64,000 nucleotides of DNA, from IMG/VR virus record IMGVR_UViG_3300028840_001395, positions 248,001 to 312,000 of that record. One strand, 5' to 3'. Positions 28,050 to 58,765 of this stretch are shown here, piece by piece (position 1 is the stretch's first letter; every line of letters begins with the position of its first letter). Position numbers and translations under genes: made by a program. The notes under the pieces are model-generated. The model ran no database searches, was not told the DNA's origin, and saw nothing but the letters and a program-made list of their open reading frames with translations.

Positions 28050-29318
28050 CTAGAACAGGGAAAGGACAGATTCCTCTGTATCTTCGTCAGCTTCAGGGGC
28101 CGGACGGCCCGTCAGCCGGGCTCTGGCAAGCTCCAGATACTCGGGATTGAGGTCGATGCCGATGTAATCTCTTCCGTGCCGAAGGGCGACCATCCCCGTG
28201 GTGGCCGACCCACTGAAGGGGTCGAGGACGATGCAGCGTGCGGTGGGGTGGCTCCCGCACTCGCAGGTCGGCTCCCAGTGGTAGGTCTTCTTCCGCAGGC
28301 CGTCGAGGATGCGCCGCTTCACGTCGCTGGGGTTCTCGGCCCCGGTGCCCTCGTAGTCCTTCACGGCCTGTCCGGCGTAGCCGCCGGACTTGTCGGCCCC
28401 GCACGCCTTCTTGTGGGCCTCGTCGGGGTCGCCCTTGGTCACGATGCGCTGCCAGGGCGCTCCACAGGCTGCACACGCGCCAACCTCGCTGGTCCCGGCC
28501 AGAATCATCGGTTCGACTAGCTCGGGAGGCCAGACGGCGAAGTGAGCGCCCTTGTAGGGTCGGGGGTTGACGTTCCAGACGGTTCTCTTGTTGCGACCCT
28601 GGCTCGTGTTCCACTGGGAGAACCCGCCGTCCTTGGCGTTGCGGTTCCCGCACCCCTTCTGCTCGTTGCGGGCGGCTCGCTGGCGCTGCCAGTCGGGGTT
28701 GTTCTCCCTGCCCCACGAGGAGGACTCCCTGATGGCCTCCTGGTCGTAGAAGTAATGCTGATTCTTGGTCAAGAGGAACACGTACTCGTGGGCCTTAGTT
28801 GGGCGATCCCGCACCGCCTCTGGCATCACGACATTTTTCGCCCAGATCACGTCACTCCTCAAGTACCAGCCATCCTCTTGGAGGGCGAAGGCGACACGCC
28901 AGGGGATGCCCACCAAGTCCTTCGGCTTGAGGCCCGGTGCCTTTCCCCCACTGCGGTTCTGATAACGGTCGTCCACCTGCTGGAACCCACTCGACTTGCC
29001 GCCGGGGTGGCCTCCGTCCCGCCCGGCGTTGTACGAGTCACCCAGGTTCAACCAGACGGTGCCATCGTCGCGGAGGACCCGCCTGACTTCGCGGAACACA
29101 CTGACCAGGTTCTCCACGTACTCCTTGGGCGTCTCCTCCAACCCAAGCTGGCCCTCGACGTTGTAGCTCCTCAACCCCCAGTAGGGTGGAGAAGTGCAGA
29201 CCGTGTGGACATGCTTGTCGGGGAGGTACTTGAGACCCTCGATGACATCGAGCCCGTAGAGCAAGTCGGCGCTGGGCGGGTTATCCCCGAGAGGGTATTC
29301 GACAGTCTCGGGCTTCAT
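28050..29318 (-). CDS. Beta-class N4-C/N6-A DNA methyltransferase
   Basis: TSPPY (motif IV), RVLRDDG, HFAVWP, VLDPFSGSATT (motif I), IGIDLN; Zn-ribbon insertion. Confidence 0.92.
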   Translation of the reverse strand: MKPETVEYPLGDNPPSADLLYGLDVIEGLKYLPDKHVHTVCTSPPYWGLRSYNVEGQLGLEETPKEYVENLVSVFREVRRVLRDDGTVWLNLGDSYNAGRDGGHPGGKSSGFQQVDDRYQNRSGGKAPGLKPKDLVGIPWRVAFALQEDGWYLRSDVIWAKNVVMPEAVRDRPTKAHEYVFLLTKNQHYFYDQEAIRESSSWGRENNPDWQRQRAARNEQKGCGNRNAKDGGFSQWNTSQGRNKRTVWNVNPRPYKGAHFAVWPPELVEPMILAGTSEVGACAACGAPWQRIVTKGDPDEAHKKACGADKSGGYAGQAVKDYEGTGAENPSDVKRRILDGLRKKTYHWEPTCECGSHPTARCIVLDPFSGSATTGMVALRHGRDYIGIDLNPEYLELARARLTGRPAPEADEDTEESVLSLF

Positions 29319-30598
29319 GTCAGGAACTCCAGCACGTTGGGTTCATCGTCCTCTTCCTTGACCTTCTCGGGAGCAGCCCGTTCCTGCAGCCTGGCTGTCG
29401 CCAGAGCGAGATACTCGGCGTTGATGTCGATGCCGATGTAGTTGCGACCTTGCTTCATGGCCACAAGCCCCGTCGTGGCCGACCCGCTGAAAGGGTCGAG
29501 CACGGTGCAGGGGATCGTGTGGGCGTCGCACTTGCAGGAGGGCTTCCAACCCACCGTTCGGGCATCATAGCCAACCATGCTCTGACCACCCGGGATTGCC
29601 GACTTGTGACGTGAATAGGTCGGCCCATGTAGCTCCTTGCGGTCGTCGGTGACCACCGGGTTGTGACCCTTGATCCTCTTCTTCTCGATGACCCTCACCC
29701 TCGGAGCACCACAGGATGAGCAGCAACCCTCCTCGCTCGACCCAGCCAGAATCATCGGTTCCACGAGCTTCTCGGGCCAGGTGGCGAAGTGCGACCCCTT
29801 GTAGGGCTTCGGGTTCACTGTCCAGACCGTCCTCTTGTTGCGCCCGCCGGGAGGATGGAATCCCGTGGCTCCCCCCCGCAGCAGACTGGTCTTGCCCGCC
29901 TGCCCTTCATACTGGGAATCGAGTACGGCAGCATCTTCGATCTTGCGGTCACTCCAGCGGTTGAACTTGTGTGGTTCCTTGATGGCATCCTGGTCGTAGA
30001 AGTATCGCTCGTTCTTCGTGAGGAGGAACACGTACTCGTGAGATTTGGTTGGGCGATCCCGAACGGACTCTGGCATCACGGCGTTCTTCGCCCAGATGAC
30101 ATCCGACCGGAGGTACCAGCCGTCCGCCCGAAGGGCGAAGGCGACCATCCAAGGGATGCCCACCAGGTCTTTCATCTTCATCCCAGCCGGGACAGGTGGG
30201 CGCTGGGTTTTGGTGTACTGGGTCTTGACTGTCTCGGCGTACCGGGTCGAACCGGACTTCACCCCGTCGAGCCCGCACTTCGTCCCCATGTTGCCGGTCG
30301 GAGTGGAGACATAGGAGTCGCCCAGGTTCAACCAGACGACCCCATCGTCACGGAGGACTCGCCGGACTTCCCTGAACACCGAGACCAGATTCTCGACATA
30401 CTCCTGGGGTGTCTCCTCTAGCCCAAGCTGACCCTCGACGTTGTAGCTGCGAAGGCCCCAGTAGGGCGGAGAGGTCGCTACCATCTGAACAGACTGGTCA
30501 GGAAGGAGCCGGAGGGCCTCACGGACATCGATGCCGTAGTAGAGCTTCGACTGGGGCGCGTCATCGCCAAGTGGATATTCTACGATGACAGGTTTCAT
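29315..30598 (-). CDS. Beta-class N4-C/N6-A DNA methyltransferase (tandem paralog)
   Basis: TSPPY, HFATWP, VLDPFSGSATT, IGIDIN. Confidence 0.92.
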   Translation of the reverse strand: MKPVIVEYPLGDDAPQSKLYYGIDVREALRLLPDQSVQMVATSPPYWGLRSYNVEGQLGLEETPQEYVENLVSVFREVRRVLRDDGVVWLNLGDSYVSTPTGNMGTKCGLDGVKSGSTRYAETVKTQYTKTQRPPVPAGMKMKDLVGIPWMVAFALRADGWYLRSDVIWAKNAVMPESVRDRPTKSHEYVFLLTKNERYFYDQDAIKEPHKFNRWSDRKIEDAAVLDSQYEGQAGKTSLLRGGATGFHPPGGRNKRTVWTVNPKPYKGSHFATWPEKLVEPMILAGSSEEGCCSSCGAPRVRVIEKKRIKGHNPVVTDDRKELHGPTYSRHKSAIPGGQSMVGYDARTVGWKPSCKCDAHTIPCTVLDPFSGSATTGLVAMKQGRNYIGIDINAEYLALATARLQERAAPEKVKEEDDEPNVLEFLT

Positions 30599-47090: not shown

Positions 47091-47408
47091 TCACGGGTCT
47101 TGGTGATACCGGGGCTTGGCGCACTTCTTCTCTAGCTCCTCGCACTTCTCGATGGTCACGACACAGGAGGGGGCCAGGGCGAAGCCGTCCTTCTGCGTCT
47201 GGATGCAGAACTCCTCGCAGGTCGTCCCGTCCATCAAGGGCATCCCCTCCGGGCAGCCCAGCGCCCGAAGGTGGTCACAGGCAGCCCCGCACTGGTCAGT
47301 GTCATCCGGCTCGATGACGATGGGCGGAGGCTTGACCTGGCAGTGACTCCCCAAGAGGAGAGGCGACATCACCAGCAGGGCCAGCAGAATCTTGAATGCG
47401 CGCATCAC
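47091..47408 (-). CDS. Cys-rich predicted lipoprotein
   Basis: Signal peptide LLLGSHC; 8 further Cys. Confidence 0.6.
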   Translation of the reverse strand: MMRAFKILLALLVMSPLLLGSHCQVKPPPIVIEPDDTDQCGAACDHLRALGCPEGMPLMDGTTCEEFCIQTQKDGFALAPSCVVTIEKCEELEKKCAKPRYHQDP

Positions 47409-48244
47409 TCGGCTCCCTTGCTTCGCACGAACGGCTCCCAGCCGCCGACCATCACCCAGAAGTCGTGAACGTGGTCGTCACTGGCGATGTAGTCGGGGTC
47501 CATGAAGTAGAAGCCGTCATGGCCCCAGGACGACCCCCAGGAGTTCTCCCCGATGAACTGCCCGTCCTTCCAGCCCAGAATCACGGTGGCGTGCCAGCCC
47601 GTGATGTCCTTGGGGGGCCGGAGCGGCTCCTCGTGGCCCTTGATGAAGCCCCGGTAGGTGTTCCAGTTGCGGCCCACCGCTGCGCCGAACACCACCGGGC
47701 ACCCTGCAGCCAGAGCGAGGATGACGCTCTCCACCCGGTCGGCCCCGCGCGCCCGGATGGTATAGAAGGAGTCGATCTTGTGGACGAACGCCTTCCGCAT
47801 CGCCATCCACGATGGGGGCGTGTACACCTTGGCCAGGTCGAAGGGCCAGTCCTCCTCGGTGCAGACCCCGTAGCGCCGAAGGACATCACACGCCAGTCGG
47901 ATGAAGGTGCCGCCGTCGTCGTTGGTCTGGGGCGGGAACATCAGGTTGCGGGCCAGGTAGTAGACCGCCAGGCGCGACAGATCCACATGGGCGTTCGGGC
48001 CGTGCTTGAGAATGCGCTGGATCTCCAACGCCTTGACCGTAGCTTGGGCGACACAGGAGGACGAGTGCCGCTGGTTGTGCCGGGGCGACGTGAACGGTCG
48101 GAGGTCGATGTCCACATCCGTCACGATGCTCGCAGCCTTCATCTTGGGCCGGAGCTTGTCCTCGAAACCCCAGAAATCAGGGGAGTCTTCTTCGGGCAAG
48201 AAGCCGCTGCCACTGATCGGATAGTCGTTGTCAGCCATCTTCAT
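47405..48244 (-). CDS. Papain-like cysteine peptidase (C1)
   Basis: NQRHSSSCVAQA (Q/C), GWHATVILG (H), ENSWGSSWG.DG (N). Confidence 0.88.
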   Translation of the reverse strand: MKMADNDYPISGSGFLPEEDSPDFWGFEDKLRPKMKAASIVTDVDIDLRPFTSPRHNQRHSSSCVAQATVKALEIQRILKHGPNAHVDLSRLAVYYLARNLMFPPQTNDDGGTFIRLACDVLRRYGVCTEEDWPFDLAKVYTPPSWMAMRKAFVHKIDSFYTIRARGADRVESVILALAAGCPVVFGAAVGRNWNTYRGFIKGHEEPLRPPKDITGWHATVILGWKDGQFIGENSWGSSWGHDGFYFMDPDYIASDDHVHDFWVMVGGWEPFVRSKGAE

Positions 48245-48280: not shown

Positions 48281-48859
48281 TCAAGGCATGGGGGCCTCGG
48301 GATACTCGAAGGTCACGAAACACAGGGCAACGAAGCAGGTGCCGAAGTCCTCGTCCACGACCATCTCACGGACGGAGGTCTTGAAGCTCGGCTCCAGGCG
48401 ATACTCGGGCTGGTGTCCGTAGCGGCGCTCGAAGATGCCCCGAAGGTCGGCTTCGAGAATCTTGCTGGCCTTCTCAATGGAAGCGTGACCCTCGTACTCG
48501 GCAGCAAAGCCGCCGATGGTCTTCCAGGAGCCGTCCCCCTGCTTCTTCTTGACCCAGCAGCGGCCTACCCCGGCGCAGAGGTGGTCGCCCTGGACGCCAT
48601 CGATCTGGGCCTTGATCGTCTCCAGCACAGCCCCATGATGGAACAGGGCTTCGCGCTTGGCCTCCTCGATGCTGATCTCTTCCGACTCGGGCGGCAGGAC
48701 GCTGGTGTACATCATCACGTTGAAGTTCTCGATGCCCGCGTCGAGCAGCGCGATGTCGTAGCACGAAGTCTCGTAGTGGTCAGAACCAGTGTCCGCCGAG
48801 GACTGGCCCACACCCGAGGTCACGAAGTACTTGCAAGGAATCCGACAACCTGTAGCCAT
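48281..48859 (-). CDS. pdaD: Pyruvoyl-dependent arginine decarboxylase
   Basis: P..YF.TSG.G.S...YD.ALL.AGIENFN...YT/SVLPP self-cleavage site; FAAEY; FVALCF. Confidence 0.85.
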   Translation of the reverse strand: MATGCRIPCKYFVTSGVGQSSADTGSDHYETSCYDIALLDAGIENFNVMMYTSVLPPESEEISIEEAKREALFHHGAVLETIKAQIDGVQGDHLCAGVGRCWVKKKQGDGSWKTIGGFAAEYEGHASIEKASKILEADLRGIFERRYGHQPEYRLEPSFKTSVREMVVDEDFGTCFVALCFVTFEYPEAPMP

Positions 48860-48903: not shown

Positions 48904-50909
48904 TCAGATTTCTGGTTTCCGACCCACCACGAAAGGCTCCCACGCGGGCTTCAGGGCCGTTCCATAGCCCTCGTAGCGTTGAGCCTCCTCGCTGACAGGC
49001 ACCTCGCCGTCCTTCTCATGAAAGCCCTTCTCTTCAGCCTCTCTCATCCAGGGACGATCCCCCCCTTCTATGCCATGCCCACTGTTGATGCTCTTGGGGT
49101 TGCGAACATCCTTCGCCGGAATACGAATCTTTTCCCGCACAGCTCCGGCCTTCTTGTCCAAAGCCTTGGAGATGTTCAAGGACTTCGGGAATCCCGAGTT
49201 TCCCGTGATGAAAATCTGATCCTTGCGTCGGGCCAGGAAGGCTCCCGTGGGAACACGGACACACCAGACAGGCCCCTCGTAGTGCTCTGTCACAGCGGCC
49301 TTGAGATGTCGGGCCTGAAGCTGGGTCATCGGGTTCATGTGCAGCCCAACAACGGCCTTCCTGAAGTTGATGCGACCCTGCCGATTCATCAGGTGCGCCA
49401 ACGTCTGGAACCACACGAGGTCTTCAGGATCCTTCTGATAGAATGCCCACCGACCCCGATCACAAGCTCCGTCACCTTTGAGAACGGCATCCACGAAAGC
49501 GTGCTTCTCTTCACGGGTCATCTGCCACAAGAGGTGCCAGGAAGGACGCTTCCCAGGGAGCATCTCTCGGACGTGAAGTGCCATAGGCCCCGTGAAGAAC
49601 CAGGTGTGCTCGATGTAGTCCCTGTCCTTGTAGGTACGCTCCCGCTCGTAGTGTCGATACTCGGGAATAAGCTCCTCGACCAAGGAGTAGATTTCCTGAA
49701 CGTGCTCCATGTTCACAGACGACTGGTAGATGCGAACGCCCGTGCCGTTCTGGTCGAATCCACCCTCTGTCCAGACCCAGCCCAAGAGTGCCGCCAGCTT
49801 GGTGCCTCCGATGCCAGAGCCGTCATGAACTCCAGCGAGAGGAAGTCTCAGGTTGTTCCAGCGGTCGATCTGACCAGCTTCCTCGACGTTCCACTCCGGC
49901 TCATCCCACGCCTGCCGGACACCATCGATCATCTTCCGAATGCGGTGCTTCTTGTACACCCGATGGTTGGGGGTGAGAAGCTGGTCGGTGTTGTCATTCC
50001 TGAAACAGATGAGGTCACCCTCGAAAGGAGCCTGGATGACTTCCTCGACCGGCTCCAGACGGATATCATCCGTCTTGCTGTCCCAGCAGGCGACCTTCTC
50101 GCCCACCTGGACTTCCAACCCCGACTTCCATCCTGTCTCGGTCAGGATCTCGGAATCGTCGGGGAGACAGCCGTACATCCAGGCTTCAAGGTCGAGGTCA
50201 ACGAATCCGACCTGCTCCATTGCCGCAGCCATCCGGTGGAACGTCCGGGTCGCCCCGAACACCTTGATGACACCTCCCGGTTTGAGAACGCGGAACACCT
50301 CCTCCAGCCACTGCCGATGCCACTCCTGCATCGCCCTCGTCTGCTCCAGGCGCGTGTTGGGGAAGGAGGGATTGTCACAGCGACACCGCTTGAAGCCCTT
50401 ACGGTCGTTGCCCCGCTTGCTGCCCCCACAGTTCTCGCAGATGGGATTCTGATCGCCTGTAAAGGACGGGAGGGGGCTGTCACTGAATCGCTCCGACCCA
50501 CCCGTCGTGAAGGACGCCCCGCCTGTGGCGACCTTCTTCCCTCGACGTTTGCCGACCGGCTTCCAGTGGTCATGAGGCTGCTCGCAGGTACACTTCTTGG
50601 CCCCCCGCAGACGGCCACCGCACTCGGCACAGGTGGGGTTCATCCCACCGTGCGGCAAGCTGCCCCCATGCGAAGGCCACGGGATGTTCCGGTCACCGAT
50701 GCCCACCTTGGACATCCCCGCCCCGGTCGCCCAGAGTCGATCCCAGTCCTTGCCCATGAATTCAAGTCCGTGGTATGCTAACCGTAGGGCGGGTCACAGA
50801 CGACTGCCCCGATGGACTCTTCATCCATCACCTGGAGAAGCTCGAAGCTGTCTCCAAGTCGGAGGGTGATCGTCTGGCCTGCCCTACGGCAGCCAGTCTC
50901 CTTTGTCAT
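48904..50909 (-). CDS. Catalytic (DPPY) subunit of a split beta-class DNA methyltransferase; interrupted by a 14-nt coding gap and an intein
   Basis: uORF 50909..50778 MTKE...GDS...VVCDPPYG*; second frame GLEFMGKDWD...RVLKPGG..FGATRTFHR..YG|SGFPKS...GTALKPAWEPFVVGRKPEI*; no motif I. Confidence 0.75.
49198..50169 (-). mobile_element. Intein with LAGLIDADG endonuclease in the MTase subunit (324 aa)
   Basis: YG|CLPDDSEILTETGWK ... TPNHRV ... LLGWVWTEGG, AVLKGDG ... FITGN|S. Confidence 0.9.
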
Positions 50910-50921
50910 GTGAGTTACTCC

Positions 50922-52025
50922 TTACCACAAGTCCAGCACATCGACTTCTGGCTCGGGCTCGGGGATGACGAGATCATCCAAGGGACTCTCCAATCTCCTC
51001 ATGATGACGCAGTTATTCTCCATCGTGGTGGTCTTCTCGCCATCCTTCATCGCCCTGGAAATCTTCGACACCAACTCATCCTCGAAGGAGTTGGTGACCA
51101 TTCGCTCGACATGCAAGATACCTTGGGCGGCCTCTACGACCATATCACTGAGCTTCTTGTCACGTTGAACAGGGCCAACCTCGAAGATGATGCGGCCTGT
51201 GGGTTTCACCACGCGGGCTAGCTCCGTCAGACAGTCCTTCAAGAACTGCAGGTATTTCTTGGCATCCCGGATGAACGTGCTGGGCTCCTCGGCCTTCAAG
51301 AACCACAAGCGCAGCCAGTTCTGGTCCGCGTAGTCTATCACGTCGAGAAATGGCGGCGATGTCACCACCATGTCCACAGAGTCATCGGGGAGGGGCAGTC
51401 TACGGGCATCCCCCTCCTGGATTTTTCCATCGCCCTTATGTCCCTCAACCGGAATGAACTTCACGGCTGCCTGCCGCAGGATGTATTTCACGTTACGGAA
51501 CTCGGGCTCCGTCTTGTGCTTGGCCATCGCGGTCAGCAGACTTTTCGCCCGTACCGAGAACACGTTGTAAGTTTCGGTGGAGAAAAATCCCGCAGAATGT
51601 CCATGTAGACGCCCCATCGCCAGAGCCGTCAAGGTCGGAGAACGATCCGCCTCCCGTAGATGATAGACCTGGGGCCAGGTATCAGGATGGTAAAAGGGCT
51701 CGACCTCCGGAGGAGGGGGTGGAGCCTCCCCCTCCAGGTTCAGAGCCTCTATCTCTTCCATGACCTTGGGTTGGGTGTCACAGTTGAGCTTGACGCGGGA
51801 CAGGGCGAGCGCCACAGGGTTCACGTCCGTCCCGTAGAAGGTCTTCCCCCGTATAGTCGCCTCCAGTGCAACCGTTCCCCGGCCCACGAAGGGGTCGAGT
51901 ACGGTCTGAGCCTCGGGCACTAAGTCGAGGAAAAATCCAGGAAGTTGAGGAGGGAAGCACCCCTGATAGGAGCACACTTGGTGGAGTTTGTGCCCTCGTT
52001 TCGGCTTGGTAGGCCAGAGAGTCAT
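50922..52025 (-). CDS. Alpha-arrangement amino-DNA methyltransferase
   Basis: YQGCFPP, VLDPFVGRGT (motif I) preceding VVTSPPF (motif IV), RVVKPTG. Confidence 0.85.
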   Translation of the reverse strand: MTLWPTKPKRGHKLHQVCSYQGCFPPQLPGFFLDLVPEAQTVLDPFVGRGTVALEATIRGKTFYGTDVNPVALALSRVKLNCDTQPKVMEEIEALNLEGEAPPPPPEVEPFYHPDTWPQVYHLREADRSPTLTALAMGRLHGHSAGFFSTETYNVFSVRAKSLLTAMAKHKTEPEFRNVKYILRQAAVKFIPVEGHKGDGKIQEGDARRLPLPDDSVDMVVTSPPFLDVIDYADQNWLRLWFLKAEEPSTFIRDAKKYLQFLKDCLTELARVVKPTGRIIFEVGPVQRDKKLSDMVVEAAQGILHVERMVTNSFEDELVSKISRAMKDGEKTTTMENNCVIMRRLESPLDDLVIPEPEPEVDVLDLW

Positions 52026-52027
52026 GG

Positions 52028-52246
52028 CTATCTGGTAACTGGGAGGTCAACGGTCTTGACATCTCCCGTCAGGGACACCTGAAGATCTCCTTCGTGGTTC
52101 TCAATGAGGACGGACGATTCCTCGTCCCCCACCTTTCCCAGAGAGATATGGTCATGACCCACATGCACGATTACCTGGAGCTTCTCTTCGGACTCCCCTT
52201 CGATATCAGGAAGCCCCGCGACTACGGTGACATCAGACATATTCAC
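52028..52246 (-). CDS. Small acidic hypothetical protein
   Basis: GGAGG RBS, 72 aa. Confidence 0.5.
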   Translation of the reverse strand: MNMSDVTVVAGLPDIEGESEEKLQVIVHVGHDHISLGKVGDEESSVLIENHEGDLQVSLTGDVKTVDLPVTR

Positions 52247-52261
52247 TGCCTCCTTCTCCCT

Positions 52262-52852
52262 CTAACCAAGCAATTCGTCCAAGAAATTCTCCAACGAGTC
52301 CTCATTATCCCGCGAGCGGGATGGGCGATAGGGGTTCCCGTCCCTGTCATGGCCCCTGTCCACCCGAGGCTGGAGATACATGTGCTTGCACTGACCCTTT
52401 TTTGGTCCTTTGTAGAACTTCACCATCCGGATCCCGGCCTTGTGCTGAGCGACCTTGCGCCATTTCGTCCTGCCCTTGGTAGGCAGGCTCCAGAACCCGA
52501 TGAGGTTCCCCGACGCATCGCGGAGCTTCCGGATTTTCAACGCCAACCGCTTCATCTGGTAGTACGGGATAGGCGAAGGCTCCGGGAAATGACGATAACA
52601 CTTCCCCGCATCGGGACCAGTCTCGATACCCTCCAAGTAAGAAACCCCCGTGGCCTCGACATGAACATGCCGGATCAGAAACTCGAAGGGATTGCACAAC
52701 CGCCCGCACTCAACACATCGGCGGTACAATTCCTTCACGTCGCCGCCCTTGGGGCCTATCACATTTTTTCGGGAGGCCACAAGGTCCAGAAAGATGACCT
52801 TGCCATCTTCCACCTCTACGGGGAAACTACGCCAAAAGCCAGAACGTCCCAT
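52262..52852 (-). CDS. Hypothetical basic protein with acidic C-tail
   Basis: GGAGG RBS; CVEC; SLENFLDELLG tail. Confidence 0.5.
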   Translation of the reverse strand: MGRSGFWRSFPVEVEDGKVIFLDLVASRKNVIGPKGGDVKELYRRCVECGRLCNPFEFLIRHVHVEATGVSYLEGIETGPDAGKCYRHFPEPSPIPYYQMKRLALKIRKLRDASGNLIGFWSLPTKGRTKWRKVAQHKAGIRMVKFYKGPKKGQCKHMYLQPRVDRGHDRDGNPYRPSRSRDNEDSLENFLDELLG

Positions 52853-52884
52853 ATCCAACCTCCGGCTATACTACCCCATCTGCC

Positions 52885-54327
52885 TCAATCATCATCCCCC
52901 CAGCCGAACATCGAGTCGAGAGACTCCATCTCGGGCTTCTCCACCGTCCGGTCCGAGACGATCTCCGGGCTGTCGCCCACGATGCCACCTCGGGCCTCGC
53001 GCTCCCAGTGCCGGACCCTGGAATCTGCGATCTCCAGATACTCCTCCTCGCGCTCGATGCCGATGAAGTCGTGGCCAGTGAACACGCACGCCAGGGCCGT
53101 CGTCCCGCTGCCCATGAACGGGTCGAGCACTGGCCCCTCGTTGGTCGGGACATCTTCCAAGAGCCGCCGCATCAGGCCGAGAGCTTTCACGGTCGGATGG
53201 AAGTTCTTGACGCGCTCCGCTGTCCGCCCGGCCCCCGCCGCAGGGCATTCCAGTCCATCTGAGCCCTCTTGCCGGTCAAAGCACGCCTCGGCCCCCGTCT
53301 TCCCGGCCAGGTGGTCACAGCCCGCTTCGCGCTCGCTGCGGGCTGCCTTGGCGACATAGTGGAAGCCGTCCGGCTCATCTACCCACAGGATGGAGTCTCG
53401 GATCTCGAAACCGGCGTCCTCGATCATGCAGGCTCCGGTGTGGCCTGTGGGCTCGTCATCGGGAGCGACGAGCATCAGGTGTCCGCCGGGCCGGAGGACA
53501 CGGAGGAACTCCTCGATCTGCTTCTCGGTCGGCTCGCCTTTGACCAGCAGCCCCGTGACGGACTCCTTGGCCCACTCGCCCGTATCGTAGTCGGTGCTGT
53601 CCAGGTCGAGGAACATCGCTCTGGGAGCAGGCTCTGGTGGGGAGATCATCGTCAGCAGGTAGTCGATCATCTCCTGTGGCATCTTACTCATCTCTGCTCC
53701 TTGGACTTGCCGGTAGAACCGGCTCGCGCCGCCCTCATCATCATACCCGACCATCCCACCATGCCGGGTCGTGATGCTCCCCCAGCCGTCGTATCCCTTG
53801 AAGTTGCTCTTGATGTGATGAGGCTTGCAGCCTTCGCGAGGCCCACTCTGATCATCCAGCACGACAATGAGGCACTCGGGATGACACTCCCAGGCGGGGA
53901 CTTCTTCGAGGCCGTTCTCGTCCGAGTATCCTCGACGGGTCGCCTCGGTTGGACGGAATCGCCATTGGCTCTTATCCGCCCGTCCGGCATCCCCTTCGGG
54001 TCGGGTGTCTACCCGGATGCCCTTGACCTTCTTCGTCCCGACCTGACGACACTCGGGCCGGTGTTGCAGAATCACATTCGGGGGCCAGCGGCCCTTCGAC
54101 CCACACCGCTCCTGGACTTCCTCGGCACTCATCGCGTGGATGCGGAAGGTGCTCTCCCCCTGGTAGCCCTTGGTGCCGTCAGCCCCCGACTTGTACCAGC
54201 CGGGGATGTCATCGGGGTCACGGCCAACCCGGCTGGCATCGATGTTCAGCCCCCCAGCTTCGTGGCGCAGCACGTTGTCTGCGACCGACCCGATCAAGGG
54301 CTTGCGGGCCAGGGCGATGGTCCTCAC
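52885..54327 (-). CDS. MTase cassette 4 fused to a SAM-binding subunit lacking the catalytic DPPY
   Basis: N-part LARKPL...GRWPPNV...GGASRFY; internal AAGGAG plus ATG at 53691; C-part RVLRPGG, IEDAGFEIRD, HPTVK, VLDPFMGSGTT, FIGIE; motif IV reads LVKGEP. Confidence 0.8.
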   Translation of the reverse strand: MRTIALARKPLIGSVADNVLRHEAGGLNIDASRVGRDPDDIPGWYKSGADGTKGYQGESTFRIHAMSAEEVQERCGSKGRWPPNVILQHRPECRQVGTKKVKGIRVDTRPEGDAGRADKSQWRFRPTEATRRGYSDENGLEEVPAWECHPECLIVVLDDQSGPREGCKPHHIKSNFKGYDGWGSITTRHGGMVGYDDEGGASRFYRQVQGAEMSKMPQEMIDYLLTMISPPEPAPRAMFLDLDSTDYDTGEWAKESVTGLLVKGEPTEKQIEEFLRVLRPGGHLMLVAPDDEPTGHTGACMIEDAGFEIRDSILWVDEPDGFHYVAKAARSEREAGCDHLAGKTGAEACFDRQEGSDGLECPAAGAGRTAERVKNFHPTVKALGLMRRLLEDVPTNEGPVLDPFMGSGTTALACVFTGHDFIGIEREEEYLEIADSRVRHWEREARGGIVGDSPEIVSDRTVEKPEMESLDSMFGWGDDD

Positions 54328-54842
54328 GACTCGTCCTGCGTCTGCTTGTAGAAGCGAGATGTGTCGTCCTGGTCATCCAGCGCAGCTACGGGACAACACT
54401 CATCGCACTCCCATGCTTCGACCACCTCAAGTCCATCTGCGTCGGCGTAGTCAGTGCCCTCCCGCTCGACACCGCCCCCATAGGCCCCCGTCCCTCCCAG
54501 GCTGGTCTTGCTGTGATGATGGTTCACGCTGGTCGGGACCCGCTTCTCACCGACGCACACGCACTCGGGACGGTGGTGCAGAATCACGTTCGTCGGCCAG
54601 CGCCCACCTTCATGTTGCTGGCTCCGGTAGTCGTCGCCCTCTGGAGAGGCGTTGAACACCCGGCGCTCTGTGTGCAGGCCGGGGTTGGTCTGACACGTCT
54701 GGTTGCTCGACCCCCACACCCCTGCGCCCTTGGCACCACGGACTCGGCTGGCATCGATGTTCAGTCCGCCCGTCGAATGTCGAAGGACGTTCTCCGCGAC
54801 AGAACCGACGAGGGGCTTCCGGGCCAGGGTAATGACCCTCAT
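54324..54842 (-). CDS. Stand-alone MTase variable cassette 3
   Basis: MRVITLARKPL..SVAENVL...GGLNIDASRV...GRWPTNV.LHH.PEC...WEC..C.CPV..LDDQ...SRFYKQ. Confidence 0.8.
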   Translation of the reverse strand: MRVITLARKPLVGSVAENVLRHSTGGLNIDASRVRGAKGAGVWGSSNQTCQTNPGLHTERRVFNASPEGDDYRSQQHEGGRWPTNVILHHRPECVCVGEKRVPTSVNHHHSKTSLGGTGAYGGGVEREGTDYADADGLEVVEAWECDECCPVAALDDQDDTSRFYKQTQDES

Positions 54843-55363
54843 GATCTCTTGACCTGCTTGAAGAAGCGGGAGGCTCCTCCTTCATCAGCAAACCCTCGGA
54901 CGCTCGTATCCCTGACCTCATTTGGATTCCAGGTCATCGAGACACCGGATGTTGGATAGATCGCTCGTCCTGTAGGTTGCCGGACAGTCCCTTTGATCTC
55001 CCCACTCTGGTCATCCAGGGCATCAACGGGGCATCCATCCTCGCACTCCCAGTCGGGAACCTCCTCAAGCTCCGAGTCGCCCAGTTGCGTGACCTTCTTC
55101 GTCCCGACGACCTGGCACGCGGGCTTGTGCTCCAAGATGACGTTCGCCGGGAAGCGACCCACTCGCTGCTCGTTGATTCTGTCGATGGGATAGAAGGAGT
55201 TCTTCGGGCCGTAGTATCGCTCCCCACCACCCTTGATCAGCACGTCCTTGACTCCGATGCGGCAGGCCCCGATGTTCAGCCCACCCGTGCCGTAATTCAA
55301 CACATTCTCGGCTACGCTCCCCCCCTTGGGGAGAGGCTTGCGGGCCAGGGTGATCACTCTCAT
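54839..55363 (-). CDS. Stand-alone MTase variable cassette 2
   Basis: MRVITLARKPL...GRFPANV...WECEDGCPV..LDDQSG...GGASRFFKQV. Confidence 0.8.
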   Translation of the reverse strand: MRVITLARKPLPKGGSVAENVLNYGTGGLNIGACRIGVKDVLIKGGGERYYGPKNSFYPIDRINEQRVGRFPANVILEHKPACQVVGTKKVTQLGDSELEEVPDWECEDGCPVDALDDQSGEIKGTVRQPTGRAIYPTSGVSMTWNPNEVRDTSVRGFADEGGASRFFKQVKRS

Positions 55364-55847
55364 TCCTTGACCTGCTTGAAGAAGACAGAGGTGACATCCC
55401 CGCTCTGGTCGTCCAGAGCCAGGACGGGACAATCCGGATGGCACTCCCAGGCTTCGACTTCCTCCTCTACTTGATCGATGATTTCCGTCTTGGGAGGCTC
55501 ACCGCCATAGTCAATCTTGACAACCTTCTCGGTTAACTTGACGGTCTTGGTTCCGACACAGATACAGTCAGGATGGTGTTCCAATAGAGCATTCGGAGGC
55601 CAACGCCCCATGACACTCTCGGGCCAACCAGGAGGGGGTCTCCGTGGGAGGTTTCCCCACTTTGGCACTTTCCTTTGTCTCCATGTCCTCGACACGTCTC
55701 GGGCCAGTAGGAGCACTGAGTACCCCCACCTTTTTTCCCTACCCGGCAACCATCGATATTCAAGGCCCCCACGTCTCTCTTGAGCACGTTATCGGTGATC
55801 GAGGAATCCTTCGGGAGAGGCTTCCTAGCCAGGGTGATTACTCTCAC
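55360..55847 (-). pseudogene. MTase variable cassette 1, frameshifted near 55636
   Basis: First half (LARKPL...LNIDGCRV) in ORF 55533..55847; second half (GRWPPN...WECHPDCPV...FFKQV) in ORF 55360..55749. Confidence 0.7.
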
Positions 55848-58765
55848 CTCGCTTCCAGTTCCTTCATGTCATCTTCGTCCAGGGCATCGCCCACGGATTC
55901 CTTCTGCTCCGTGGTCATCGGCACCTCGTAGCACGTCAGGATGCGCCGACAAGGCCACTCTACCCGTGAGAGGAACATCTCAAAGGGCTTCTGGTCACGC
56001 GATTTCAGGCACTGGAACTGAACACGGTTCTGGTCACGGAGGTCATCATCGACCCAGGAGGAAGTCACAATGTCAGCCGAGTTGTGCGACAACAACGGCC
56101 CCGTCTGATACTCGTGATCCCCCTCCACCTCCAAGTCCATGACCGGAGCATCAATCCCGGTGTCCCGAACCGACTCAACCTGCATTACCTGAAGCTCCAA
56201 GAGCTTTTCCAGGAACCGCGTATCCTCGTTGTCGATGCCATCCTCGGTGGCTGCCTGGAGAAGCGTCTCAATAGCCCCGCGAGGCACAAGACCCGTCCGC
56301 TTGACCTTCCGGGGGTTGTTGTAGAACGCCCGCTTGAAGCGCGTCTGCGGACTCCCAGGGGGGTGGATGAGCTTGTAGACCCGCAGGAACGTCTCGGGAA
56401 CCGGGTAGACCTGCTTGTCACAGGGGGTCTGCTTGAGCGAGTCCCACACCAGACCCATCTTGGCATCTTCAGTGAAACCGATCTTCTCCAAGAATCTCCG
56501 ACGACCCTCACGGGAGACCACCCGCAACGTGTAACCGCCGTAGGTCTTCCCGGTCTTCTTCAAGGAGGTCTCGTTGTAAGACAGGTGGGAGTCGATACCA
56601 AGACCCGTCAGGAGCATCTGAATCTGACGGAGGAAGGACTCACTCGCCTCCTTCATCTTGAGGCCAATGATGTTGTTCTTGTTGACCCACCCGTCCGTGT
56701 CGAAAAGACCCCGCAGGTAGGCGCATACCGTGCTCTCTGTCCCTTGCAGGATGCACTCCGGGACATCTCCTGCCCGCTGACCAGCGACCTGCTCGAACCA
56801 TCGCTTCAAGGGCTTCGACCACTTCACCAGATCGAAAGACCCAGGGCGAGAGGGGCTTTCCAGGAGAGGAAGCTCGTGACCGAACGTGGCCTGGAAGGCG
56901 TACCGGATGGCTTCCCGAACCTGCATCTCCAGCCGGTTCCCAGTCCACGCGAGACCGCCCGAATGAACCTTCCCATCACCATCCCACGCGCCGAGGAGGT
57001 AGGCTAAGGTGGGGGTGGTGGAGAATGGGGCGTCCAGTTCACCCTCCCCCTTCCGACCCACCAGGGTCTCATACCTCCCAGCTTCAAGATCCGGGAGCCG
57101 GGTATCCTCTTGCGCCCATCGAGAGCCCCCCTGGGACGATGCAAGATAATCCTCAGAGGTCAAATCCCGAACAGCCTTCCATCCCAACAACCCGTCCTGA
57201 ACCACCCGGACGCGATGGGGGGCAGTAGCCTCCAGGATGGAACCCCGACTGGTCTTGACCTCCCAGATACGCCGAACGCCGTTATCGAACTTGTTCAGCA
57301 CCTTCTTCCACCCACCGGAAGACCACACCGAATCCCCGATACTTATGTCCCCGATGTTAATGTAACCCCTCAAAGAAGTGACGTAAGTGCTTGAAATCCT
57401 TACACAACGCTCTGCCTCGTTAGCGTAGCTCAAATGGGTCAGGTCGTAGCTCGCCGTGCCGGTCTTCTCCTTGCGCTTGGTCGCGGCCTTGTAGCCCTCA
57501 CGGTTGATCTGGAACAAGGCGATGACGGCCATGCCCATTCCCCGCTGGAAGCTCATCGCCAGGCGCTTGCAGTCACGGATGATCTCATTGAGGCGTTCCG
57601 TCGTGCTCGACACCCACTTGCGAGGGGCCATCAGCCCAACGTGGTCGATGTAGATGGACGAGAACGGAGACTTCGAGTAGACCAACTCGGCCCGGTGCCG
57701 GAGGTCAGCCATCGTGAAGTCGGCCTTGTCCGGGTCAGCGACCTCGATGTGGATCTTGCCGAAGTTCCGGGGGTCGGGCCACGGGGTGTTGTTCTCGGAG
57801 TCGAGGGTGTGAACCATCTGCTTGCCCATGAAGTCTGGCTTTACGAAATCCGCCAGGAACTTCTTGGCGTTCGGATGGAACTCATCCAGCGTGCCGTCTC
57901 GGACGTTCGTGTAGGGCAAGCCCACGCTGTCGTTGGGGTGCTTCTGCAAGCCCAGCTTGTAGCGGATCTCCTTGAACTTGGGATGCTGGCTGTGCATGGC
58001 GAACAAGATGCGACGGCATTGCTGGTAGGGCATCTCCAGGGAGAAGATCAGGCTGCTGTGGTTGTAGAGGATGGCCTGGTTGTAGGCCCAGTTGAGCATG
58101 AACGTGGACTTCAACCCACCCGTGAACCCCGCGTGTATCCACAGCTCGTTCCGCTTGGCTCCGTTGAGGGCGGAGTCCATCTGGGTCAGGCCCGTGTGCT
58201 GGCCAATGCCCGCCAGGGGATCAGCCTCGACCCGCTCATACTCCGCCATGAAATCCTCGCCGTCCTGGGTGACTTCGCCCGAGAGGCGACCACCAAGCGT
58301 CGGGGCCACGATGTCGTGGCTCTCATCGAGGATGTGGTGAATGGCGGCATACGGCCCCTGAATGACCTTCTCTTCCTTGCCGTCCGTGACCTTGATGCCC
58401 TTGCCCAGGATGTCCGCTGCCTTCTTGAGAAGCTCGCTCACGGCCCGGACGCGGCGCTCCTCGGCTTTGGCTTCGAGGCGGGTCTTGAAGTTGCCGTCGA
58501 TCAGGACGGGAAGAACCTCAAGGGCCTTGACCCGGTTGACGACCGTTTCTTCCTTCTTGATGGTGAAGTGGGTGACTATGGCGTTGATCTCGGGCACATG
58601 GTTGTGCGTCTGGACGAACTCCTGGATGAACGTCCAGATGATCACGTCGTCGGGAACATCGAACTCCAGCCGGGACTCATGCAGAATCCTGAAGTTCCGC
58701 AGGAGGTGGGTGGCGTCGTCGTCCTTGGCGTTGACGATGAACGTGGAACGCAGGAGGGACTTCAC
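55844..58765 (-). CDS. dnaB: DnaB-like replicative helicase with intein
   Basis: TGLTQMD, Walker A GFTGGLKST, FSLEM, IYIDHVGLM, QINR, LKSRD. Confidence 0.9.
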   Translation of the reverse strand: MKSLLRSTFIVNAKDDDATHLLRNFRILHESRLEFDVPDDVIIWTFIQEFVQTHNHVPEINAIVTHFTIKKEETVVNRVKALEVLPVLIDGNFKTRLEAKAEERRVRAVSELLKKAADILGKGIKVTDGKEEKVIQGPYAAIHHILDESHDIVAPTLGGRLSGEVTQDGEDFMAEYERVEADPLAGIGQHTGLTQMDSALNGAKRNELWIHAGFTGGLKSTFMLNWAYNQAILYNHSSLIFSLEMPYQQCRRILFAMHSQHPKFKEIRYKLGLQKHPNDSVGLPYTNVRDGTLDEFHPNAKKFLADFVKPDFMGKQMVHTLDSENNTPWPDPRNFGKIHIEVADPDKADFTMADLRHRAELVYSKSPFSSIYIDHVGLMAPRKWVSSTTERLNEIIRDCKRLAMSFQRGMGMAVIALFQINREGYKAATKRKEKTGTASYDLTHLSYANEAERCVRISSTYVTSLRGYINIGDISIGDSVWSSGGWKKVLNKFDNGVRRIWEVKTSRGSILEATAPHRVRVVQDGLLGWKAVRDLTSEDYLASSQGGSRWAQEDTRLPDLEAGRYETLVGRKGEGELDAPFSTTPTLAYLLGAWDGDGKVHSGGLAWTGNRLEMQVREAIRYAFQATFGHELPLLESPSRPGSFDLVKWSKPLKRWFEQVAGQRAGDVPECILQGTESTVCAYLRGLFDTDGWVNKNNIIGLKMKEASESFLRQIQMLLTGLGIDSHLSYNETSLKKTGKTYGGYTLRVVSREGRRRFLEKIGFTEDAKMGLVWDSLKQTPCDKQVYPVPETFLRVYKLIHPPGSPQTRFKRAFYNNPRKVKRTGLVPRGAIETLLQAATEDGIDNEDTRFLEKLLELQVMQVESVRDTGIDAPVMDLEVEGDHEYQTGPLLSHNSADIVTSSWVDDDLRDQNRVQFQCLKSRDQKPFEMFLSRVEWPCRRILTCYEVPMTTEQKESVGDALDEDDMKELEAR
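56081..57406 (-). mobile_element. Intein with LAGLIDADG endonuclease in DnaB (442 aa)
   Basis: AER|CVRIS ... ATAPHRV ... YLLGAWDGDG, YLRGLFDTDG ... LLSHN|SAD. Confidence 0.92.

What the first reader, a model, noticed from the sequence alone, without database searches (positions are those of the whole stretch)
48904..55847. Split, multi-subunit DNA methyltransferase with a tandem array of interchangeable variable cassettes
Known: this phage beta-MTase family is normally one chain: DPPY...GSGFPKS...TALKPAxEPIxLARKPL-[variable region, GRWPAN]-GGASRFF-YxAKA...HPTVKP...DPFxGSG. Seen: here it is in three kinds of pieces. (A) 50909..48904 has DPPY and stops at EPFVVGRKPEI, with no SAM motif. (B) Four translationally coupled cassettes (55847, 55363, 54842, 54327) each start MR(V/T)I(T/A)LARKPL, end near SRF(F/Y)xQ, conserve an H-x-P-x-C...WEC...C metal site and have different loops. 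(C) From the internal RBS/ATG at 53691, a subunit with the SAM motif but a dead motif IV, lacking exactly the segment B encodes (W-VDEPDG-FHYVAKA). Cassettes share 18-20 nt identities (54230/54745, 54025/55091, 54849/55367). Inference: B cassettes donate the missing beta-strand plus a target-recognition region, so one A/C core gains several specificities by subunit exchange or recombinational cassette swapping. I know of no described equivalent.
Basis: partly seen in the sequence, partly recalled or inferred. Interest (0 to 1): 0.9.

Follow-up and report, generated by a model that had tools for sequence, protein, structure and literature searches.

The report
Split phage DNA methylase with interchangeable parts
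A giant phage encodes a DNA methyltransferase in three kinds of separate pieces (a catalytic half, a cofactor-binding piece, and several different DNA-recognition cassettes). The same kit recurs in at least ten other large uncultured phages, so it is probably one enzyme core that can mark several DNA sequences to evade host restriction.

Summary
On the minus strand, 55847-48904 holds four tandem cassettes (B1-B4) homologous to the strand-7 + target-recognition segment of a beta-class N6/N4 DNA methyltransferase. It also holds a piece C (SAM motifs X/I, degenerate motif IV, no recognition segment) and a piece A (DPPY, motifs IV-VIII, stops right after strand 7).

- B1 is frameshifted.
- B4 is fused in frame to C, with a retained AAGGAG/ATG at 53691.
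- A carries a 324-aa intein.
- A is interrupted right after DPPYG by an 11-nt stop-containing gap.

It is not decay:
- The A/B/C kit recurs in about 10 other large phage contigs, with 1 C, 1-6 A and 1-6 B each.
- All 31 other cassettes are intact, with dN/dS 0.2-0.4.
- Natural fusions exist (B-C, B-B-B-C, A-B-B-B, A-B-C).
- About 65 of the top 150 profile hits are stand-alone ~200-aa cassettes.

An AlphaFold model of a natural A-B-C fusion pairs A with C's SAM half as a canonical methylase domain.

Best reading: a modular, probably multispecific methyltransferase that works by subunit choice. Programmed DNA shuffling is not supported.

The gap after DPPY recurs in 19 of 71 relatives with matched codons on both sides, which suggests short translational bypassing.

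The parts
55360..55847 (-). Cassette B1: strand-7 + recognition module, disrupted. The N-terminal part is in one frame (stop at 55533). The GRWPPN...SVFFKQVKE part is in another frame.
   Evidence: identical in three assemblies
54839..55363 (-). Cassette B2, intact 174-aa ORF. ATG overlaps the B1 stop (ATGA).
54324..54842 (-). Cassette B3, intact 172-aa ORF. ATG overlaps the B2 stop.
53692..54327 (-). Cassette B4 (GTG start overlapping the B3 stop), fused in frame to C. Its variable loop 2 is conserved in cassettes of two other phages.
53689..53702 (-). Internal AAGGAG (53702..53697) + ATG (53691): likely separate start for free C.
   Evidence: The same arrangement is seen in B-C fusions of L048, L051 and L138. 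C starts here as its own gene in L039 and L050.
52885..53691 (-). Piece C. It has a degenerate N-half (ISPP / KGEPT instead of DPPY, catalytic loop deleted), no strand 7 and no recognition region. Motif X (FHPTVKA) and motif I (DPFMGSG) are intact.
50778..50909 (-). N-terminal 43 codons of piece A, ending in the catalytic motif DPPYG followed by TAG.
50770..50780 (-). 11-nt coding gap (TAGCATACCAC) between take-off codon GGT (50783..50781) and candidate landing codon GGA (50769..50767).
48904..50769 (-). Rest of piece A: LEFMGKDWD, two Zn-ribbon-like inserts, motifs V-VIII, the GSGFPKS region and strand 7. It stops at EPFVVGRKPEI and has no SAM motif.
49198..50169 (-). 324-aa intein (C...N/S, LAGLIDADG-like core) inserted between MYG and SGFPKS of A.
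   Evidence: The site is empty in L047 and holds a mini-intein in L039.

Best explanation
This is a functional, modular beta-class (PF01555) DNA amino-methyltransferase built from separately encoded parts.
- A carries the catalytic half-domain (motif IV DPPY to strand 7).
- C carries the SAM-binding half-domain (motifs X, I-III), joined to a catalytically dead second half-domain that lacks strand 7.
- Each B cassette carries a strand-7 handle plus a zinc-stabilised recognition region with three variable loops.

Inferred mechanism: A docks on C's SAM half to rebuild the canonical methylase fold. One B at a time docks, probably on C's dead half-domain, and sets the DNA sequence recognised. With B2, B3, B4 and a fifth cassette elsewhere in the genome, one A/C core would then methylate several different motifs and protect the phage from several host restriction systems. 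B4-C is made as a fusion, and free C probably also comes from the internal start. Choice among cassettes is by subunit assembly, not by DNA rearrangement.

Shown: the parts, their complementarity, conservation, selection and natural fusions.
Inferred: the assembly topology, multispecificity and the anti-restriction role.
For: - Homology map: A, B and C align to successive parts of single-chain enzymes. C = N-half + C-half with the B region excised.
- The kit recurs with DnaB synteny in L039/L133, L047, L048, L049 (1 C, 6 A, 6 B), L050, L051, L131, L136 and L138.
- All 31 non-window-B1 cassettes are intact, and dN/dS is 0.19-0.41.
- Cassette starts sit at the same homologous residue.
- Natural fusions: B-C (window, L051, L131, L138), A-B-C (L048), B-B-B-C (P0074), A-B-B-B (P0081), and single chains with 2-4 tandem recognition modules (P0075-P0078).
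- Profile search: 16478 cluster representatives hit, and about 65 of the top 150 are stand-alone ~200-aa cassettes.
- 42 of 71 A relatives stop right after strand 7.
- DPPY is invariant in A, and motifs I/X are invariant in C.
- The AF2 model of the natural A-B-C fusion has pTM 0.75. Foldseek aligns whole beta-class MTases (M.BceJIV, M1.HpyAVI, RsrI) across more than 520 query columns with target-normalised TM 0.64-0.75, meaning A + C's C-half form the canonical domain. In the B4-C model, N' + C-half do not (TM 0.21-0.26).
- Loop types are conserved across phages.
Against: - There is no experimental evidence of interaction, activity or specificity.
- The B4-C model is low confidence (pLDDT 63, pTM 0.46), and strand 7 of B4 is not placed.
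- The A-B-C alignment included single-chain enzymes, which biases AF2 towards pairing A with the C-half.
- Both A and B carry a strand-7 copy, so the docking site of B is unresolved.
- dS is saturated, so dN/dS values are rough.
- B1 is broken, which shows that cassettes can be lost.
- With B4 fused to C, it is unclear how free cassettes gain access unless free C is made.
Confidence: 0.6

Rival explanations
1. Only A plus the B4-C fusion is the working enzyme. The free cassettes are not alternative subunits. They are a reservoir of recognition modules for occasional gene conversion, or competitors that tune activity.
For: B4 is covalently fused to C here and in four other lineages. Loops are mosaic between cassettes of different phages, which shows recombination over evolutionary time. 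B1 is already broken.
Against: Free cassettes keep start codons at the same residue, 4-nt translational coupling, intact ORFs and dN/dS below 0.5 in about 10 phages. A silent reservoir would not need any of that. C is a separate gene in L039 and L050, where all cassettes are free. Fusion linkers keep an SD + ATG for free C.
Confidence: 0.15
2. The cassettes are autonomous sequence-specific DNA-binding proteins. They could be site-blocking or regulatory proteins derived from a methylase recognition domain, working without A or C.
For: They have no Pfam domain of their own. A fifth cassette lies about 40 kb away next to an HTH gene. One cassette is fused to a C5 methylase in L131. Lone cassettes occur in contigs such as L045 with no A or C within 10 kb.
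Against: The most conserved parts of the cassettes are the segments that in single-chain enzymes are integral to the catalytic domain: strand 7, GRWPAN and SRFF. On large contigs with the array they co-occur with A and C, and they are fused to them in several lineages.
Confidence: 0.12
3. The region is debris: a duplicated methylase gene decaying by frameshifts, stops and insertions.
For: B1 is frameshifted. A has a stop after DPPYG. C has a dead motif IV.
Against: The same 'defects' are conserved in phages only about 50% identical in protein. ORFs are intact and dN/dS is 0.2-0.4. The region is identical in three assemblies.
Confidence: 0.03
4. The array is read as one polyprotein (B1-B2-B3-B4-C) by recoding at each ATGA junction, like the fused B-B-B-C protein P0074.
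For: Fused versions exist. Recoding seems to occur elsewhere in the system.
Against: Each junction would need a frame change across a stop. There is no slippery motif and no linker, and each cassette has a proper start codon.
Confidence: 0.03

Closest known systems
Single-chain phage/prophage beta-class N6/N4 DNA methyltransferases of the DPPYGLxFMGKxWD / GSGFPKS / ARKPL / GRWPAN / SRFFY.AKA type (e.g. mycobacteriophage SG4 gp70; LR745208.1 28-29 kb)
   Same: Same motifs in the same order. A + B + C's C-half add up to one such enzyme.
   Different: Here the chain is cut after strand 7 and after SRFF. The recognition segment is multiplied. The SAM half is attached to an extra dead half-domain.
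Multispecific C5-cytosine methyltransferases of Bacillus phages (SPR, phi3T, rho11s, H2) (from my own knowledge; reviewed in PMC12707154)
   Same: One catalytic core serves several tandem recognition modules, each for a different target. It is a phage anti-restriction device. Fused relatives here (P0074-P0078, P0081) have the same tandem layout.
   Different: Those are C5 enzymes with all modules in one polypeptide. Here the enzyme is an amino-methyltransferase and the modules are separate, translationally coupled proteins.
Type I restriction-modification methylases (HsdM2 HsdS) and phase-variable hsdS loci
   Same: Specificity lies in a separate subunit. Several alternative specificity genes sit in one locus.
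   Different: There is no HsdS homology and the core is gamma-class, not beta-class. hsdS switching uses inverted repeats and a recombinase, and neither is present here.
Naturally split C5 methyltransferases M.AquI and M.EcoHK31I, and engineered fragment complementation (PMC3404938, PMC2836561)
   Same: A DNA methylase fold assembled from two polypeptides.
   Different: They have two parts only and no array of recognition subunits. They belong to a different enzyme class.
Beta-class dimers with division of labour (EcoP15I Mod2, CcrM), and the MT-A70 complexes METTL3-METTL14 and ciliate MTA1c (PMC7544214)
   Same: An active and an eroded beta-class unit work together, with recognition and catalysis on different units. 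MTA1c adds separate DNA-binding subunits. There are weak Foldseek hits to MTA1 and METTL3.
   Different: In those complexes each subunit is a complete fold with or without activity. Here the single fold itself appears to be divided between polypeptides.
Translational bypassing in phage T4 gene 60 and short tRNA hops (PMC5462505, PMC10732093, bioRxiv 10.1101/2022.08.31.505936)
   Same: A take-off codon is followed directly by a stop, then a non-coding gap, then a matching landing codon. Take-off is often Gly, and the gene is a phage gene.
   Different: Gaps here are 1-21 nt, not 50 nt. No conserved stem-loop was found. The site lies right after a Pro-Pro motif. It is untested.

Membership tests
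Beta-class N6/N4 DNA methyltransferase (Pfam PF01555) | Motif IV (D/S/N-P-P-Y/F/W) N-terminal to motif I (FxGxG), in one catalytic fold | tested here: inconclusive
   Motif IV is only in A (DPPYG). Motifs X/I are only in C (PF01555 positions 160-219, E 8e-19). The order is right if A + C assemble, but no single polypeptide has both.
Beta-class N6/N4 DNA methyltransferase (Pfam PF01555) | Fold similarity to solved beta-class enzymes | tested here: met
   The AF2 model of the homologous natural A-B-C fusion matches CcrM, M.BceJIV, RsrI, MboIIA and M1.HpyAVI (probability 1.00, TMt 0.51-0.75). Sequence hits to the same entries.
Beta-class N6/N4 DNA methyltransferase (Pfam PF01555) | SAM-dependent methylation of DNA adenine N6 or cytosine N4 | not testable with these tools
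   Needs expression and methylome reading.
Multispecific phage methyltransferases (SPR type) | C5 catalytic motifs (PCQ, ENV) in the core | tested here: not met
   A and C carry amino-methylase motifs (DPPY, FxGxG) and no C5 motifs.
Multispecific phage methyltransferases (SPR type) | Several recognition modules in tandem serving one core | tested here: met
   Four tandem cassettes are present here, 3-6 in relatives, and fused tandem forms exist. That each has its own target is inferred only.
Type I HsdS specificity subunits / invertible hsdS shufflons | HsdS homology (Methylase_S), and inverted repeats with a recombinase | tested here: not met
   Cassettes have no Pfam hit. There are no inverted repeats between cassettes, and no recombinase gene in the operon.
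Programmed translational bypassing (gene 60 type) | Take-off codon followed by a stop; cognate landing codon; reading resumes to give the conserved protein | tested here: met
   19 interrupted junctions. 15 have a non-Tyr take-off codon, of which 7 have identical codon pairs and 13 share the first two bases. This includes the non-Gly pairs CTT/CTT and GAG/GAG. Canonical spacing is restored in all.
Programmed translational bypassing (gene 60 type) | A single polypeptide spanning the gap is made; stimulatory RNA structure or nascent peptide | not testable with these tools
   No conserved stem-loop was found in 6 sites. Only L136 has a strong hairpin, z -4.8. The junction peptide needs mass spectrometry.
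Intein (class 1) | Insertion in a conserved host-protein motif, Cys at position 1, terminal Asn, nucleophile at +1, empty site in homologues | tested here: met
   MYG|C...TGN|SGFPKS. The site is empty in L047 and many others, and holds a mini-intein in L039. No Pfam intein hit was found for A.

The most novel reading that the evidence does not exclude
Huge phages use a combinatorial methyltransferase. A shared SAM-binding hub (C) rebuilds a Rossmann fold with any of several catalytic half-domains (A). It picks up any of several recognition cassettes (B) through exchange of a terminal beta-strand, giving many specificities from few genes. In addition, synthesis of the catalytic half is gated by a new class of very short programmed ribosomal hops (1-21 nt gaps) placed directly after the stalling-prone D-P-P-Y motif.
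Probability: 0.3. Interest if true: 0.9.

Novelty: new variant of a known kind. Interest (0 to 1): 0.8.

Why it matters
If the parts assemble as inferred, this is the first amino-methyltransferase whose fold is naturally divided into catalytic, cofactor and recognition subunits, with a menu of recognition subunits. That would explain how very large phages with broad or changing hosts cover many restriction systems cheaply. It would also give a natural split-enzyme scaffold for programmable DNA methylation, and a test case for how enzymes evolve by fission, duplication and re-fusion.

The recurrent gap after DPPY could add many natural examples to translational bypassing, which is so far known from very few genes.

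My five literature searches found no description of either feature.

Tried and rejected
- Near-identical DNA in GenBank phages: none. The window is IMG/VR contig UViG_3300028840_001395, 436 kb.
- Sequencing error as the cause of the B1 frameshift and the DPPYG stop: rejected, because three assemblies are identical.
- Shufflon or inversion switching: no inverted repeats, and only 60-88% similar conserved blocks.
- Stop-codon reassignment or simple frameshift for the A gap: rejected, because gap lengths give all three frames and L039 has two different stops.
- A conserved RNA stem-loop at the gap: not found.
- Staphylococcus phage 'two methylase genes' as a known split: these are two complete enzymes. 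Mycobacteriophage SG4 gp70 is a normal single chain.
- The fifth cassette (P0014) is not inside the window.
- Structure of B4-C: the model was too poor to place strand 7.
- Genome collection scan: only two C-type hits, both MAG contigs. The remaining 78 loci match C only from about residue 50 onward, mostly with an inserted segment, as single-chain enzymes do, and come from many bacterial taxa; their architecture was not examined.

Full report
WHAT IS THERE

All genes of interest lie on the minus strand in one tightly packed operon:
- DnaB helicase with an intein, 58765..55844.
- Cassette B1, 55847..55360.
- Cassette B2, 55363..54839.
- Cassette B3, 54842..54324.
- One 480-aa ORF, 54327..52885, made of cassette B4 followed by piece C.
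- Two small unknown ORFs.
- An unrelated complete methylase, 52025..50922.
- A 43-codon ORF ending DPPYG-TAG, 50909..50778.
- A 617-codon ORF, 50757..48904 (piece A).

Pfam sees only fragments of PF01555. A matches profile positions 26-90, C matches positions 160-219, and the cassettes match nothing.

The nearest GenBank phage is the 485-kb uncultured phage LR745208.1. It has a normal 515-aa single-chain enzyme. The window pieces align to it in order: A to the N-terminal half, each B to the strand-7-to-SRFF segment (30-41% identity), and C to the N-half plus the C-half with the B segment missing.

CORRECTIONS TO THE ANATOMY

- B1 changes reading frame inside its first variable loop. A codon-usage scan hints at two shifts.
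- B1 and B4 start with GTG.
- B4 is fused to C. The proposed internal start at 53691 is preceded by AAGGAG.
- A contains a 324-aa intein between MYG and SGFPKS (50169..49198) and two zinc-ribbon-like inserts.
- A is interrupted: TAC GGT | TAGCATACCAC | GGA CTT GAA TTC ATG.
- The short DNA identities between cassettes are only the conserved coding blocks. There are no inverted repeats.
- The 11.6 kb is identical in three independent assemblies.

IS IT DECAY OR DESIGN?

A search with B3 found about 50 unannotated proteins of 170-280 aa, many starting MRVIT(L/V)ARKPL and ending GGASRFFKQV. Their contigs, plus scans with alignments of C and A, gave about ten other large phage contigs (37-536 kb) carrying the same kit, usually next to DnaB:

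| Locus | Content |
|---|---|
| L039/L133 | C, two B, N43 + A, one more B |
| L047 | C with an N-terminal extension, N46 + A, five B |
| L049 | one C, six A, six B |
| L048, L050, L051, L131, L136, L138 | further variants of the kit |

- All 31 cassettes outside B1 are intact ORFs, with the start codon at the same homologous residue.
- Pairwise dN/dS is 0.19-0.41. dS is saturated, so these values are rough, but they are clearly not near 1.
- C is the best conserved part: 65% mean column identity among three phages, against 50% for A.
- A profile of the cassettes hits 16478 cluster representatives, 2616 of them at E below 1e-30. About 65 of the best 150 are stand-alone cassettes of ~200 aa.
- 42 of 71 A relatives from metagenomes and the phage loci above stop right after strand 7.

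EVIDENCE THAT THE PARTS WORK TOGETHER

Different lineages fuse the parts in different ways:

| Fusion | Where |
|---|---|
| B-C | window, L051, L131, L138 |
| A-B-C in one 577-aa chain | L048 |
| B-B-B-C | P0074 |
| A-B-B-B | P0081 |
| Single chains with two to four tandem recognition modules | P0075-P0078 |

All four B-C fusion linkers examined (window, L048, L051, L138) keep a Shine-Dalgarno sequence and an ATG exactly where the stand-alone C genes of L039 and L050 start. Free C is therefore probably made as well.

Cassettes share conserved ends and three variable loops. Particular loop types are conserved between phages:
- Loop 2 of the window's B4 matches cassettes in L039 and L138.
- Loop 1 of the fifth cassette matches L039 Ba.
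- Loop 3 of L039 Ba matches L138 B3.

This is the pattern expected of specificity determinants that are shuffled over evolutionary time.

HOW IT MAY ASSEMBLE

Two topologies are possible:
- (I) C folds on itself as a dead methylase, B donates strand 7, and A is left without a SAM site.
- (II) A pairs with C's SAM half to rebuild the active fold, and C's dead half-domain holds B.

Functional logic favours II. DPPY is invariant in every A and motifs I/X in every C, and no other SAM half was found in the window or in the fetched ~10-20 kb around the kits; whole genomes were not scanned.

An AlphaFold2 model of the natural A-B-C fusion (pLDDT 73, pTM 0.75) is matched by whole beta-class methylases over more than 520 query columns, with target-normalised TM 0.64-0.75. 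That requires A and C's C-half to sit together as in a normal enzyme. In the (poor) model of the window's B4-C, the dead half-domain and the SAM half do not form such a domain (TM 0.21-0.26).

Caveats:
- The alignments are shallow.
- Single-chain sequences in the first alignment bias the result towards topology II.
- I could not inspect contacts.

Beta-class enzymes are known to work as dimers with recognition and catalysis on different units (PMC7544214), which fits a recognition unit (B + dead half of C) beside a catalytic unit (A + SAM half of C).

WHAT IT IS LIKE

- By function, the closest analogues are the multispecific C5 methylases of Bacillus phages (several recognition modules, one core) and Type I enzymes (a separate specificity subunit).
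- By construction, the closest are the natural two-part C5 enzymes M.AquI and M.EcoHK31I (PMC3404938, PMC2836561).
- It is a member of none of these. It belongs to the PF01555 beta-class family, in a new three-part, multi-cassette form.
- PHROGs has profiles that look like an N-half alone (phrog_6025) and like strand 7 + recognition + C-half (phrog_3008). Both are labelled only 'DNA methyltransferase'.
- Five literature searches found no description of such a system. A jumbo-phage survey mentions only multiple methylases.

THE GAP AFTER DPPY

The same interruption is present in L039, L047, L050 and L136. In a set of 71 distinct junctions, 19 are interrupted.
- The codon after DPPY (or the Tyr codon itself) is followed at once by a stop.
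- Then come 1-21 non-coding bases.
- Then comes a codon identical or nearly identical to the one before the stop: GGT/GGT, GGC/GGC twice, GGG/GGG, GGA/GGA, CTT/CTT, GAG/GAG, and several GGN/GGN pairs.
- After that codon, the reading frame gives exactly the canonical DPPY-x-(L/I)-x-F-M spacing.

Gap lengths put the downstream part in any of the three frames, so simple frameshifting or readthrough cannot explain the set. Seven exact matches in fifteen, at about 1/64 each, is far beyond chance.

This is the signature of translational bypassing as in T4 gene 60, on a much shorter scale. The alternative is two polypeptides with re-initiation at the conserved ATG, plus repeated site-specific insertions that duplicate the target codon. 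No conserved RNA structure was found.

VERDICT

A modular multi-subunit methylase is very likely real. Multispecificity by subunit choice is the best but untested reading. Programmed recombination is not supported.
- The system is a new variant of a known kind of enzyme and is widespread in uncultured large phages.
- It comes with a second, possibly more surprising feature: short coding gaps after the catalytic motif.

Noticed in passing
window 50783..50767 (-); also L039 5349-5372, L047 7666-7685, L050 12572-12589, L136 6990-7006, and 14 metagenome loci (L140-L200): A short stop-containing coding gap sits directly after the DPPY(G) codons of the catalytic subunit, with matching codons on both sides. 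It occurs in 19 of 71 distinct junctions. It is a candidate for programmed translational bypassing.
   Followed up: partly
window 55360..55847 (-): Cassette B1 is frameshifted (one or two shifts, near A7/G5/C5 runs) in all three assemblies. It may be a pseudogene, or it may need a frameshift to be read.
   Followed up: partly
L038 8001-8651 (same phage, outside the window): A fifth intact cassette (216 aa) lies about 40 kb from the array, followed by an HTH gene. The same cassette + HTH arrangement occurs in L041/L042.
   Followed up: partly
window 55844..58765 (-): The DnaB helicase carries an intein with a LAGLIDADG endonuclease. Relatives L039 and L047 have DnaB without it.
   Followed up: no
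window 28050..29318 and 29315..30598 (-); 50922..52025 (-): There are three further complete DNA methyltransferases. Two are tandem SPPY beta-class paralogues, and one has the order motif I then SPPF. The phage therefore carries at least four methylase systems in this window.
   Followed up: no
L131 10495-12090: A recognition cassette is fused at its C-terminus to a complete C5-cytosine (Dcm-like) methyltransferase.
   Followed up: no
L136 4169-6415 and 6960-6994: Piece C of this phage has an insert of about 1 kb just before motif X (probably another intein). A 15-bp hairpin (z -4.8) ends exactly at the take-off codon of its A gene.
   Followed up: no
window 48281..48859 and 47405..48244 (-): A pyruvoyl-dependent arginine decarboxylase homologue and a papain-like (C1) peptidase follow piece A. 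A C1 peptidase also sits beside cassettes in L043 and L050.
   Followed up: no
L001 6483-7388 (LR745208.1): An ORF with only the C-terminal (motif X/I-like) half of a methylase lies directly upstream of the complete single-chain enzyme.
   Followed up: no
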